64,000 nucleotides of DNA from positions 169,378 through 233,377 of IMG/VR virus record IMGVR_UViG_3300024239_000015. One strand, written 5' to 3'. The notes beneath the pieces are model-generated. The model ran no database searches, was not told the origin of the DNA, and was given only the letters and a program-made list of their open reading frames with translations. Positions within the stretch are counted from its first letter, which is position 1, and every line of letters starts with the position of its first letter. The position numbers were made by a program, and so were the translations under genes. Below are positions 43,799-46,399 of the stretch, piece after piece.

Positions 43799-44674
43799 TC
43801 AAAACGTAGACAGTGGTCTTTTTGTTCCCGGAGGAACGATTGTTTTTAGTGTTAAGTTCAACGCAGGCACTTGTACTGTCTCTTCTAAAGGTAGACTGAG
43901 ACCTTTAGGAAACAGCGTCGCATACTGCCCTACCATTCCCGCAAAAGCGTCTGTTCCATTCCACACGTACACTTGTTCCATTTTCTCGTCTGTATACACC
44001 CCACACCCAGCATCTACAACTAACGAAAATAAAGAGTTCCAGAATGGCTCGTATAAGAAGATCTCATCCGCCAATACGCTAAACTTCGGAGAAATTAAAC
44101 TTTCTCCTTTCTCCGTCAGTCCGCAATGCAAGAAGCAGGCTTTCAGTAAGGTTTGGTGTTTAAACTCAGTGAAGTTAGCTCCTAAGCCTTTCGGGGTCTT
44201 TTTGTGCGCTGCGTGGGTTTCTTGTAAGTAGTCTCCTACCGTCACTAACCTCGCTTCACTTAACGCTTTACTGTACACCGGTTTAAACGTACGTAATACT
44301 GTCAGTGGGTCTTTGGTTCTCCGTACAACGATTCCAGGATACAGAGTCTGCAGTAACTCGTCCTGAGGGAGTCCTGTGAGGTCTAAACTCTCTACTGGAA
44401 GCTTACCGCAGTTGTCGTGAAGGTCTAGGTGGACACCACAGCGATCTAAACACCGGATTCGAAACTCTTCCAGTGTGCGTTTTCTAAATCCAGAGAGTAC
44501 GACTTTAGGTTGTAGGACGTATGTGAGGAAATCTCCTATCGTTTCGATCCTTAAACGTTGTAATTCACGTATCTGTCGTTCTCTTAGACTTTGTAGTCTA
44601 GTTAGCCTAACCTCGCAGGCTTCTAAGTTTATCGTGGGGTAGGTTTTCTTTAAATGGTCGTATCTGGACATCAT
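43799..44674 (-). CDS. Protein with tandem RNAP alpha-CTD-like (helix-hairpin-helix) repeats
   Basis: 'LQRLRIETIGDFL...LSGFRKRTLEEF' and 'ALSEARLVTVGDYL...KGLG'. Confidence 0.5.
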   Translation of the reverse strand: MMSRYDHLKKTYPTINLEACEVRLTRLQSLRERQIRELQRLRIETIGDFLTYVLQPKVVLSGFRKRTLEEFRIRCLDRCGVHLDLHDNCGKLPVESLDLTGLPQDELLQTLYPGIVVRRTKDPLTVLRTFKPVYSKALSEARLVTVGDYLQETHAAHKKTPKGLGANFTEFKHQTLLKACFLHCGLTEKGESLISPKFSVLADEIFLYEPFWNSLFSLVVDAGCGVYTDEKMEQVYVWNGTDAFAGMVGQYATLFPKGLSLPLEETVQVPALNLTLKTIVPPGTKRPLSTF

Positions 44675-44709
44675 TACTCTCTCTCGAGTGATTTAGTATT
44701 CTCGTAGGG

Positions 44710-44740
44710 ATAATGTAGATCTCAAATGGATTCCAGACAG
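44710..44740 (-). promoter_or_regulatory. Putative early promoter, copy 4
   Basis: CTGTCTGGAATCCATTTGAGATCTACATTAT. Confidence 0.6.
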
Positions 44741-44769
44741 CATAAACGGAAACCTCTTAGGGTTTCCTT

Positions 44770-45280
44770 ATTATTGTTTATTTTTTAAAGGGGTTACCCC
44801 CCTATAGGTTCTCATCCCCCAGACCCCCTAGCTCTCCTAGACCCCCCTCCCCAAAGACCTCGTTCGCTTCATCACTACGTTCAGGCTCACTCCGGTGAGG
44901 CTGTCGTTCGTACCTTTCGTCTTCGGCTACTACTCGCTCATTCTTCCTTTCAGTCAGAATCCCGCTCGCTGTATCCTCAACTCAAGTTACTCACTCCGCT
45001 CTTTATAGCGAAATTTCTTTCGCCTATAGAATAAGAAGTTAGTATGTAAATTTTTACATTAGTAAAAGTATATTATGTAATGTTTAATAATAGAAAATAG
45101 TTTAAAGACTATTTTCTATAGATTTTTATATATTTTATTTAATAAGAAAATTTTTTTAATAAGAAAAAGAGTTTTTTAGATAAGAGAGCTATCGCTCTTT
45201 AATTTACATATAGCGGCGGACCCAAAATCGGGAAAGTGGGAATCTGGCATGTCCGTCGTGGTCCGATCGCGTGGTGAGGC
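44770..45280. other. Non-coding origin-like region: C/G tracts, short repeats, AT-rich palindromic block
   Basis: Five C4-6 tracts at 44797-44852; YTCRYTC-like repeats at 44859-45001; strongly AT-rich 45028-45210 with palindromes. Confidence 0.5.
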
Positions 45281-45320
45281 AAAAAAAGAAGAGGGACGGA
45301 AGGTCCCTCTCTATGCCTGT

Positions 45321-45773
45321 TTAATCGCCTACGATCACTAACGTCCCGTAGTTGTTGTCTGACTCTGGTAACTCACGGACTTCTACTGCTACGGTATCGA
45401 GTTCAGCTTTTTGTTTCTCTAAAGCAAACAGAGCTGATGACAACACCATTACGATCTTTTTTACGTCATTGTTGTCGAAGACCACGAAGAGTTCTTCAGG
45501 ATCGTACATACCCCAACGGTATACTGTATTCGCATCCATAGCTACAGATTCACCCGAGTCTAGTTTCAGGTTAGCGTTGAAATCGTCTTCGAAGTCATCG
45601 GTACCCTCAAACTGTCCGTGTACAGGTAAATAATAGAAATCGTTCTCGCCACCGCTACGTTCGCAGAGTATGAATAACTGTGGGTTGAAACACGGCATTG
45701 AGTCTTTAGCGTGAGTGCTAAACACCGTGCCGATCGGAAGCTTACACAGCTCTGACATTTTTACTTTACGCAT
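45321..45773 (-). CDS. Hypothetical protein
   Basis: AGGAG RBS. Confidence 0.7.
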   Translation of the reverse strand: MRKVKMSELCKLPIGTVFSTHAKDSMPCFNPQLFILCERSGGENDFYYLPVHGQFEGTDDFEDDFNANLKLDSGESVAMDANTVYRWGMYDPEELFVVFDNNDVKKIVMVLSSALFALEKQKAELDTVAVEVRELPESDNNYGTLVIVGD

Positions 45774-45800
45774 CGAGTACTCCTAATGTAGTTAAAGGGT

Positions 45801-46226: not shown

Positions 46227-46328
46227 TTACTCCTTAGAATCCACACGACGTGCGTCGCGGTGTGCTAAATAAGCCATAGTGAAAAAGAAAGTTAATACAG
46301 TACTTGCGATGATTATAAAGTCGATCAT
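46227..46328 (-). CDS. 33-aa single-pass membrane microprotein (below the ORF-track cutoff)
   Basis: AAGGAG RBS; MIDFIIIASTVLTFFFTMAYLAHRDARRVDSKE*. Confidence 0.65.
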   Translation of the reverse strand: MIDFIIIASTVLTFFFTMAYLAHRDARRVDSKE

Positions 46329-46399
46329 GGTTATACTCCTTCATTGAGAATGGGAGAACGATCAGAGGGAGTGTTTGCCCCCTCTCTTTTTTTGTGTGA

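What the first reader, a model, noticed from the sequence alone, without database searches (positions are those of the whole stretch)
44770..45280. Tripartite non-coding element: G-quadruplex-capable tract, iteron-like repeats, AT-rich cruciform block
Seen: (i) five C-runs with repeated AGACC(CCC) at 44797-44860, which are G-runs on the minus strand; (ii) a pyrimidine-skewed stretch with recurring CTCGTTC/CTCACTC/GTCGTTC/CTCGCTC heptamers; (iii) ~180 nt of very AT-rich DNA with palindromes ATGTAAA-TT-TTTACAT and ATAGAAAATAGT-TTAAAG-ACTATTTTCTAT and a TTTAATAAGAAAA direct repeat. Nothing else in the window looks like this. Inference: a replication origin (unwinding element plus iterons plus G4/R-loop primer site), or a packaging or nucleus-anchoring site.
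Basis: partly seen in the sequence, partly recalled or inferred. Interest (0 to 1): 0.6.

Follow-up and report, generated by a model that had tools for sequence, protein, structure and literature searches.

The report
Unique non-coding module in jumbo phage
A 646-base gene-free stretch in an uncultured phiKZ-like giant phage holds the genome's only extreme A+T block and only G-run cluster, fenced by the phage's own terminators; it is most likely a transcribed non-coding unit, and it could be a replication start, but that is unproven.

Summary
All three features are real, at the stated coordinates and far beyond chance. The A+T block (10% G+C) and the five C-runs are each the single extreme of the whole 233-kb genome. 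The window is the last 64 kb of an uncultured phiKZ-like (chimallivirus) phage from a subsurface metagenome.

The element fills a 646-nt gap (44675-45320) between two leftward genes. It has phiKZ-type terminators on both sides and a standard early promoter for the next gene. So it is a self-contained module, not a spacer.

Inside, TATGTAAW boxes bracket the A+T core; TATG is the start motif of the phiKZ non-virion RNA polymerase. The core also holds a 30-bp perfect palindrome and direct repeats. Leftward lies a 230-nt purine-rich stretch ending in G4AG6...G5...G5...G6.

The "iterons" are only 7-mers at irregular spacing. No initiator gene, no skew switch and no Rfam family were found. One relative (L005) shares the layout and the ATGTAA box. 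Seven complete distant relatives and phiKZ lack it. A related strain keeps the layout.

Best reading: a transcribed non-coding unit (0.4). An R-loop-type origin is the main rival (0.25). No RNA or raw-read data exist to decide.

The parts
45281..45311 (-). Terminator of the upstream gene (45321-45773): hairpin 45311->45289 followed by a T7 run. Read on the + strand, the same hairpin is followed by CTATGCCTGT, a near match to the phiKZ terminator tail.
45212..45280 (.). G+C-rich spacer with a helix (GCGGCGGACC / GGTCCGATCGC). The part 45236-45270 is replaced by other letters in a minor strain variant.
45203..45210 (-). TATGTAAA box at the right edge of the A+T block, facing inward. The G of TATG is at 45207. 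It forms a 10-bp inverted repeat with 45043-45052.
   Evidence: (I12)
45030..45200 (.). A+T block: the genome's single most meltable stretch (10% G+C in its most A+T-rich 100 nt).
45043..45059 (.). TATGTAAA (+, G at 45046) and TTTACAT, which reads ATGTAAA on the - strand. Together they form the 16-bp palindrome ATGTAAATTTTTACAT.
45074..45081 (+). Third TATGTAAT box (G at 45077).
45090..45119 (.). 30-bp palindrome with perfect 12-bp arms and a 6-nt centre, followed by CTATAG at 45116-45121.
   Evidence: (I4)
45138..45167 (.). Direct repeat TTTAATAAGAAAA, two copies 17 nt apart.
45004..45030 (-). Hairpin at the border between the A+T block and the purine-rich stretch (CUAUAGGCGAAA-GAAA-UUUCGCUAUA on the - strand). 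It contains CTATAG at 45024-45029.
44859..45003 (-). It has six YTCRYTC heptamers and two copies of CTCACTCCG. The 35-nt core 44861-44895 is kept, with 3 changes, in related strain contigs.
44797..44852 (-). G-run tract on the - strand: GGGG-A-GGGGGG-13-GGGGG-3-GGGGG-13-GGGGGG. It contains CTATAG at 44802-44807. A related strain keeps CCCCCCTCCC while the surrounding sequence differs.
44768..44796 (-). A/T-rich linker (GGGG-TAA-CCCC, then TTTAAAAAATAAACAATAATAA). A 14-codon ORF at 44815->44771 runs through it and is probably chance.
   Evidence: read directly
44737..44767 (-). phiKZ-type terminator that closes the module: hairpin GGAAACC-CTAAGA-GGTTTCC followed by GTTTATGCTGT.
   Evidence: motif from PMC10914365
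44703..44735 (-). Standard early (virion-polymerase type) promoter of the next gene: TGGAA...TTTGAGATC-TACATTAT-N6-G. The predicted start G is at 44703, 29 nt before the ATG at 44674.
   Evidence: architecture from PMC5312081

Best explanation
The gap is a self-contained, transcribed non-coding module on the minus strand of a phiKZ-like jumbo phage.

Shown by the sequence:
- It lies between two leftward genes.
- The upstream gene ends at its own terminator (45311-45289).
- The module ends at a second, phiKZ-type terminator (hairpin 44767-44748 plus GTTTATGCTGT).
- Only after that terminator comes the standard early promoter of the next gene (predicted start G at 44703).

Inferred:
- A terminator placed there makes sense only if transcription crosses the module.
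- No canonical early promoter lies inside, so the transcript should start at the TATGTAAW boxes that bracket the A+T core. TATG is the start-site motif that the phiKZ non-virion RNA polymerase reads on melted DNA, and the 10%-G+C core supplies the easy melting.
- From the box at 45210 the product would be a leftward RNA of about 460 nt. Starting at the border hairpin it would be about 280 nt.
- The body of this RNA is about 68% purine and it ends in five G-runs.
- The two + strand boxes (45043, 45074) could give 245-275-nt rightward antisense RNAs that end at the two-way terminator.

What the RNA does is open. I rate a free regulatory or protein-binding RNA as slightly more likely than an RNA that stays on its C-rich template as an R-loop (see the first rival).
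For: - Boundaries. Hairpin + TTATGCYGT is a recurring terminator class in this genome: 26 matches to the tail follow a hairpin of -8 kcal/mol or stronger, counted on both strands, and the 44745 copy is one. It matches the published phiKZ terminator motif (PMC10914365).
- Early promoters. The consensus T(c/g)GAA...TAYWTWAT-N6-G gives about 22 sites, all on the minus strand. One lies at 44710, just after the module.
- Start boxes. TATGTAA occurs 9 times in the genome, 3 of them in the A+T block. This is the only cluster of three or more ATGTAA/TTACAT boxes per 220 nt. TATG recognition on opened DNA is described in PMC12809450.
- Relative L005. It has the same order: terminator, A+T block, purine/GGA-rich stretch. 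ATGTAA is the top hexamer enriched in both A+T blocks: 4 and 2 copies against 0.12 and 0.14 expected. A third box in L005 lies 37 nt before a gene start, as a promoter would.
- RNA folds beat shuffles: z -2.7 for the minus strand 45030-44740 and z -4.8 for the plus strand 45146-45322.
- No ORF of 40 aa or more in the gap.
- Precedent: phiKZ makes small intergenic and 5'UTR-derived RNAs that end at such terminators.
- A related strain keeps the order hairpin, 88-nt tract with CCCCCCTCCC, 35-nt core, although most flanking DNA is under 90% alike.
Against: - No RNA data exist for this phage, so no start, end or strand is observed.
- TATG is only four bases. TATGTAA is not a general promoter elsewhere in this genome.
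- There is no covariation evidence, because no alignable homologue was found.
- A 170-bp block at 10% G+C is far more than a promoter needs.
- The density of palindromes and short repeated DNA words looks more like protein-binding DNA than like an RNA gene: CTATAG three times, ATGTAAW four times, a 30-bp palindrome and direct repeats.
- No Rfam family matches.
Confidence: 0.4

Rival explanations
1. Transcription-primed (R-loop) origin of lytic replication. Phage RNA polymerase opens the A+T block and transcribes leftward. The purine- and G-rich RNA stays paired to its C-rich template, helped by G-quadruplex formation at G4AG6...G5...G5...G6. The phage DNA polymerase then extends its 3' end leftward, in the same direction as about 80% of the genes.
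For: - The genome's single lowest-stability block and its single G-run cluster lie side by side.
- If the TATG box at 45210 is used, the order on the transcribed strand is start box, A+T core, purine-rich body, G-runs, terminator.
- There are dense palindromes and repeats of the kind that bind proteins.
- About 80% of coding DNA is on the minus strand.
- No origin is known for this phage family in the papers searched.
- From my own knowledge: the layout resembles T7's primary origin, T4 oriF/oriG, ColE1 RNA II, mitochondrial CSB II (G-run, A, G-run) and herpesvirus oriLyt.
Against: - No skew change at the element, whether raw skew or third-position skew of same-strand genes. The only shift is a broad one from 207.6 kb to 28.7 kb.
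- No initiator-like neighbour.
- The heptamers are not iterons.
- Absent from phiKZ, and 5 of 7 complete distant relatives have no comparable A+T block. The other two have only 45-nt promoter-type blocks.
- L005 lacks the G-runs.
- The locus varies between strains.
Confidence: 0.25
2. A fast-evolving accessory spacer with no function of its own. It would be left over from gene loss or from insertion of foreign A+T-rich DNA into a variable early-gene region, and its repeats would be by-products.
For: - The locus is a hot spot of strain differences. In minor variants the G-tract is replaced by 88 other letters, the neighbouring gene 45321-45773 is deleted, and 45236-45270 is replaced.
- The 9-nt direct repeat CGCTCTTTA flanks the A+T block at 44997 and 45193 (D11), like a target-site duplication.
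- The element is not conserved in distant relatives.
Against: - The genome is 93% coding, so long non-coding stretches are rare.
- A 9-nt repeat is expected by chance about once in 650 nt, and there are no matching terminal inverted repeats.
- The related strain keeps the layout, the tract length and the C-run.
- The ATGTAA box is shared with L005.
- Several word classes are enriched well beyond local composition.
- A dedicated terminator closes the module.
- No copy of the palindrome was found elsewhere in viral contigs. Matches in bacterial genomes are scattered across unrelated taxa, as chance would give.
Confidence: 0.15
3. A protein-binding cis site on DNA other than an origin. Candidates are a packaging (pac) site, a partition or nucleus-positioning site, or an operator cluster for a phage regulator bound at the ATGTAAW and CTATAG words and the 30-bp palindrome.
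For: - There are symmetric and repeated DNA words: the ATGTAAA-TT-TTTACAT palindrome, the 30-bp palindrome, and three of the genome's 24 CTATAG sites.
- In L005 the element lies 2.4 kb upstream of the tubulin (TubZ/PhuZ-like) gene.
Against: - No terminase, TubR-like or DNA-binding gene was recognised nearby.
- Contigs run through the site without ends, although contigs cannot show molecule ends.
- Nothing ties the words to a protein.
Confidence: 0.1
4. A long leader or attenuator for the downstream gene, or a small-peptide gene: the 14-codon ORF at 44815->44771 preceded by AGGGGG.
For: - In L005 the purine-rich stretch runs into the next gene with no terminator or early promoter between them.
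- The short ORF ends just before the terminator hairpin.
Against: - Here a terminator and a separate early promoter lie between the module and the next gene.
- The short ORF lies in the part that a related strain replaces, and it has no support beyond being open.
Confidence: 0.05

Closest known systems
phiKZ small intergenic and 5'UTR-derived RNAs (ONT-cappable-seq; Putzeys et al. 2024, PMC10914365)
   Same: Same phage family. They are non-coding stretches between co-directional genes, ended by a hairpin plus TTAT-K-YYGT terminator just upstream of the next gene.
   Different: Those RNAs are 70-200 nt, have mapped starts, and come with no extreme A+T block or G-run tract. Here no RNA data exist and there is no sequence similarity. 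phiKZ has no 50-nt window with three or fewer G/C.
Transcription-primed origins: T7 primary origin, T4 oriF/oriG, ColE1 RNA II, mitochondrial CSB II (from my own knowledge)
   Same: A polymerase start next to an A+T-rich unwinding element. The RNA strand is G-rich over a C-rich template. The G4AG6 run has the same form as CSB II.
   Different: No start site, hybrid or replication start has been observed. In T7 and T4 the A+T element lies downstream of a well-defined promoter, whereas here the candidate starts lie inside the block and face each other. The element is not conserved across the family.
Iteron origins (lambda ori, plasmid oriV types; from my own knowledge)
   Same: An A+T-rich block next to a stretch with a recurring short word.
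   Different: The words are 7 nt, degenerate and irregularly spaced, not 17-22-bp phased repeats. No initiator gene overlaps or adjoins the element.
Herpesvirus oriLyt (from my own knowledge)
   Same: An A+T-rich palindromic part beside a G-rich transcribed part in a large virus that replicates inside a compartment.
   Different: This is an analogy only. No shared proteins or sequence, and nothing was tested.
CsrB/RsmZ-type protein-sponge RNAs (from my own knowledge)
   Same: A purine-rich non-coding RNA with many GGA/GGAG words. L005 has 11 GGA in 150 nt.
   Different: In this window GGA is not enriched in the element: windows elsewhere reach 8 TCC per 150 nt on the + strand, and none of the three highest lies in the element. 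No Rfam hit. The host is unknown.

Membership tests
Iteron-type replication origin | Three or more direct repeats of about 17-22 bp, regularly phased | tested here: not met
   Only 7-mers (STCRYTC) with start-to-start spacing of 27, 17, 30, 4 and 53 nt. The longest direct repeats in that stretch are 9 nt, in two copies.
Iteron-type replication origin | A+T-rich unwinding element adjacent to the repeats | tested here: met
   10% G+C block, unique in the 233-kb genome.
Iteron-type replication origin | Initiator gene overlapping or next to the origin | tested here: inconclusive
   The flanking proteins have no informative PHROG or Pfam match. The AlphaFold model of the 291-aa neighbour has pLDDT 33 and is unusable.
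Replication origin (any type) | Strand-composition switch at the site | tested here: not met
   Cumulative G/C skew falls steadily with no turn. Third-position skew of minus-strand genes shows no step at 214.4 kb. The test is weak for phages that replicate by recombination or in one direction.
Replication origin (any type) | Read-depth peak or replication start mapped to the site | not testable with these tools
   Only assembled contigs of four DNA runs are held, with no raw reads.
Transcription-primed (R-loop) origin | Promoter reading through the unwinding element | tested here: inconclusive
   No canonical early promoter inside: the best score is 7.2, against 19 or more for real sites. Three TATG-type boxes are present, but TATG is only 4 nt.
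Transcription-primed (R-loop) origin | G-rich RNA or non-template strand downstream of the start | tested here: met
   About 68% purine over 145 nt, followed by five G-runs on the minus strand. This is the top 60-nt G4Hunter window of the genome.
Canonical G-quadruplex motif (G3+ N1-7, four tracts) | Four G-tracts with loops of 1-7 nt | tested here: not met
   It matches only with loops up to 15 nt. The single canonical motif of the genome lies elsewhere, at genome position 129986.
phiKZ-type intergenic non-coding RNA | phiKZ-type terminator at the 3' end | tested here: met
   Hairpin 44767-44748 plus GTTTATGCTGT, one of 26 such matches counted on both strands of this genome. The motif is from PMC10914365.
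phiKZ-type intergenic non-coding RNA | Mapped transcription start and abundant short RNA | not testable with these tools
   No RNA run holds the sequence.
phiKZ-type intergenic non-coding RNA | Conservation in close relatives | tested here: inconclusive
   Short contigs of a related strain keep the layout and a 35-nt core. No near-complete close relative is in any collection searched.
Any described RNA family (Rfam 15) | Score at or above the family's gathering threshold | tested here: not met
   No hit at the gathering threshold in the whole window. With the loose search the best hit is 21.8 bits against a threshold of 70. No tRNA or tmRNA.
CsrB/RsmZ-type sponge RNA | Many GGA motifs, above background | tested here: not met
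   The element is not among the three highest GGA/TCC windows of the window. L005's counterpart is the top window of its locus, with 11 per 150 nt.

The most novel reading that the evidence does not exclude
The module is the lytic replication origin of a nucleus-forming jumbo phage. The phage's own non-virion RNA polymerase would start at TATG boxes inside an ultra-meltable core. Its G-rich transcript would lock onto the template at a G4AG6-type tract and prime DNA synthesis. That would be a phage counterpart of mitochondrial CSB II and herpesvirus oriLyt, in a family for which no origin is known.
Probability: 0.2. Interest if true: 0.8.

Novelty: new variant of a known kind. Interest (0 to 1): 0.42.

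Why it matters
The papers I could search describe neither an origin of replication for nucleus-forming (phiKZ-like) phages nor what their non-coding RNAs do. This module gives a concrete, bounded candidate for either role: a unique meltable core with polymerase start boxes, a G-rich transcript and a dedicated terminator. It also gives a simple signature to look for in cultured relatives: inward-facing TATGTAAW boxes around an A+T core, followed by a purine-rich stretch.

The limits are real. The phage is uncultured, the element is lineage-specific, and nothing about its activity has been observed.

Tried and rejected
- **Known RNA genes.** Rfam at the gathering threshold and at a loose threshold, and ARAGORN on the window and the whole genome, found nothing.
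- **Similar DNA or proteins in isolated phages.** No match for the element or for three neighbouring proteins.
- **Close relatives through the flanking proteins.** IMG/VR returned only an identical contig. The word search with the 291-aa neighbour found nothing, not even the protein itself.
- **Relatives through the HD-domain neighbour.** These share 53% identity or less, and synteny around the element is not kept.
- **Sequence homology between the window's element and L005's.** nhmmer found none. The shared CGTAGTG and GAAGCGA words are common in this genome and were dropped.
- **Strain-variant sequence** taken from a loose end of a contig: no hit in viral or JGI metagenome contigs.
- **The 30-bp palindrome as a mobile or host-derived word.** In viral contigs it matches only the identical contig of the same phage. 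A relaxed form gives 37 scattered hits in unrelated bacteria, as chance would.
- **A+T block as a cluster of early promoters.** Rejected by the promoter matrix.
- **A+T block as a transposon-like insertion.** The 9-nt flanking repeat is at chance level and there are no terminal inverted repeats to match it.
- **Fold of the 291-aa neighbour.** The model was too poor to search with.
- **Extreme A+T block as a family-wide feature.** Rejected.

Full report
**What the window is.** The window is the last 64 kb of a 233,377-bp IMG/VR virus record. Its 127-nt terminal repeat looks like an overlap left by circular assembly. The major head protein, internal head proteins, split RNA polymerase beta subunits and a divergent DNA polymerase place it among phiKZ-like phages. 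Relatives carry chimallin and tubulin genes. All sequencing runs that hold it come from one subsurface metagenome study. They are DNA runs, kept only as contigs.

**The observation.** All listed features are present.
- The A+T block has 10% G+C in its most A+T-rich 100 nt. The genome mean is 47.8% (sd 4.7) and the next lowest window is 28%.
- It is the only 40- or 50-nt window in the genome with three or fewer G/C.
- The five C-runs form the only such cluster in the genome. They are the top 60-nt G4Hunter window, but they fit a quadruplex motif only with long loops.
- The heptamer family occurs six times in 151 nt, against 0.84 in local shuffles. It was defined after the fact and its spacing is irregular.
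- The palindromes and the direct repeat are exact.
- Contigs from independent runs span the element, so it is not an assembly artefact.

**Setting.** The element fills the second-largest gene-free gap of a genome that is 93% coding. It lies between two minus-strand genes inside a 22-kb run of leftward genes. No ORF of 40 aa or more lies in it.

**The phage's own signals.**
- A 10-nt A+T-rich core (TAYWTWAT) is enriched in intergenic DNA: 19 of 45 copies fall in 7% of the genome.
- It comes with an upstream T(c/g)GAA...TTTnAG part and a G six bases downstream. This is the architecture reported for virion-polymerase early promoters of phiKZ-related phages.
- A matrix built from 15 copies finds about 22 sites, all on the minus strand.
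- One lies at 44710, directly upstream of gene 43799-44674.
- The copies inside the A+T block score 7.2 or less, against 19 or more for real sites. The block is therefore not a cluster of early promoters.
- Hairpin plus TTATGCYGT is a recurring terminator class here and matches the published phiKZ terminator motif.
- One such terminator (44767-44748 plus GTTTATGCTGT) lies at the left end of the odd region.
- The upstream gene has its own terminator at 45311-45289.

The odd part is thus fenced on the minus strand, from 45288 down to 44768. A dedicated terminator at its end implies that transcription crosses it.

**Inside the module.**
- TATGTAA occurs nine times in the genome. Three copies are in the A+T block (+45043, +45074, -45210), and there is a fourth ATGTAAA at -45059.
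- This is the genome's only cluster of such boxes.
- The outer boxes face inward and form a 10-bp inverted repeat around the core.
- TATG is the start motif of the phiKZ non-virion polymerase, which reads it on already opened DNA.
- CTATAG is avoided genome-wide (24 copies against 62 expected), yet three copies lie in the module.
- RNA folds are more stable than shuffles on both strands: z -2.7 and z -4.8.

**Relatives.** No close relative exists in the collections searched.
- One distant relative is L005, a 203-kb ENA contig with 36% G+C. It shows the same order: terminator, A+T block, purine/GGA-rich stretch.
- The genes flanking L005's element are not related to those flanking the window's.
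- nhmmer finds no homology between the two elements.
- ATGTAA is still the top hexamer enriched in both A+T blocks.
- The two purine stretches share more 6- and 7-mers than shuffles do, z about 2.1-2.4.
- L005 has a third TATGTAAA box 37 nt before a start codon.
- Seven complete distant relatives and phiKZ have no comparable block. Two of the seven have only 45-nt blocks in ordinary terminator-promoter gaps.

**Strain variants.** Short low-depth contigs from the same study belong to a related phage that is mostly under 90% alike.
- They keep the terminator hairpin, an 88-nt stand-in for the 92-nt G-tract that still holds CCCCCCTCCC, and the 35-nt core 44861-44895.
- The heptamer region is diverged but still pyrimidine-rich.
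- Other variants delete gene 45321-45773 or replace 45236-45270.
- The locus is variable, but its layout is kept.

**Origin tests.**
- Cumulative G/C skew has no turn.
- Third-position skew of minus-strand genes has no step at the element, only a broad shift between 207.6 kb and 28.7 kb.
- No initiator-like neighbour was found.
- The papers searched describe no origin for this phage family.

**Verdict.** The best-supported reading is a bounded, transcribed non-coding module whose A+T core supplies melting and start sites. Whether its G-rich RNA acts free or stays on the DNA as an R-loop that starts replication cannot be decided with the data held. I put 0.4 on the first and 0.25 on the second. 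The iteron, packaging and anchoring ideas have no support.

Noticed in passing
window 5165(+), 34961(+), 60972(-); genome 5398(-), 16892(-), 18544(-), 86073(-): A repeated structured leader of about 110 nt in the other large intergenic gaps. It has a conserved (T)ATAGTCTG followed by two or three hairpins and GAACA, and ends just before start codons. The first hairpin shows compensatory changes: 7 pairs changed on both sides in 6 copies. It matches no Rfam family.
   Followed up: partly
genome 129587-130032 (outside the window), minus strand: A second ornate 446-nt gene-free gap. It holds the genome's only canonical G-quadruplex motif (GGGAGGGGTTGGGGTGGGG followed by a T-run), then a purine-rich stretch and five near-perfect hairpins. 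It ends at a terminator and an early promoter.
   Followed up: partly
window 805, 7021, 14943, 43350, 44710, 47602, 55919, 63283 (all minus strand), and about 14 more in the rest of the genome: Early-promoter consensus of this phage: T(c/g)GAA-N-TTTnAGrtA-TAYWTWAT-N6-G. Relative L005 has the same core, (c)AGATAyACATTAT-N6-G.
   Followed up: yes
window 45316-45798 and 46239-46337: Minor strain variants in the same study. One deletes the 150-aa gene 45321-45773. Another replaces 97 nt of the gap at 46240-46336 with 407 other letters.
   Followed up: no
whole genome: Strong avoidance of palindromic hexamers: CCCGGG, GCTAGC and GGATCC are absent, and ACTAGT, GGGCCC and AGGCCT are at 0.1 or less of expectation. 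This pattern is typical of restriction avoidance. There is also no tRNA gene in all 233 kb.
   Followed up: partly
genome about 207.6 kb through the record's end to 28.7 kb: Minus-strand genes in this 54-kb arc have higher third-position G-over-C skew than the rest (permutation P 0.014). This is probably a gene-class effect rather than a replication effect.
   Followed up: partly
L024 15290-15570 (identical in L049): A distant A+T-rich relative carries two tandem copies of a unit of about 125 nt with several hairpins, in a gene-free gap. It may be another non-coding RNA.
   Followed up: no
window 43799-44674 (-): The 291-aa ORF just downstream of the module was not found in the 5.8-billion-protein collection, not even as itself. 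Its AlphaFold model is poor. It does have a textbook early promoter and a ribosome-binding site.
   Followed up: partly
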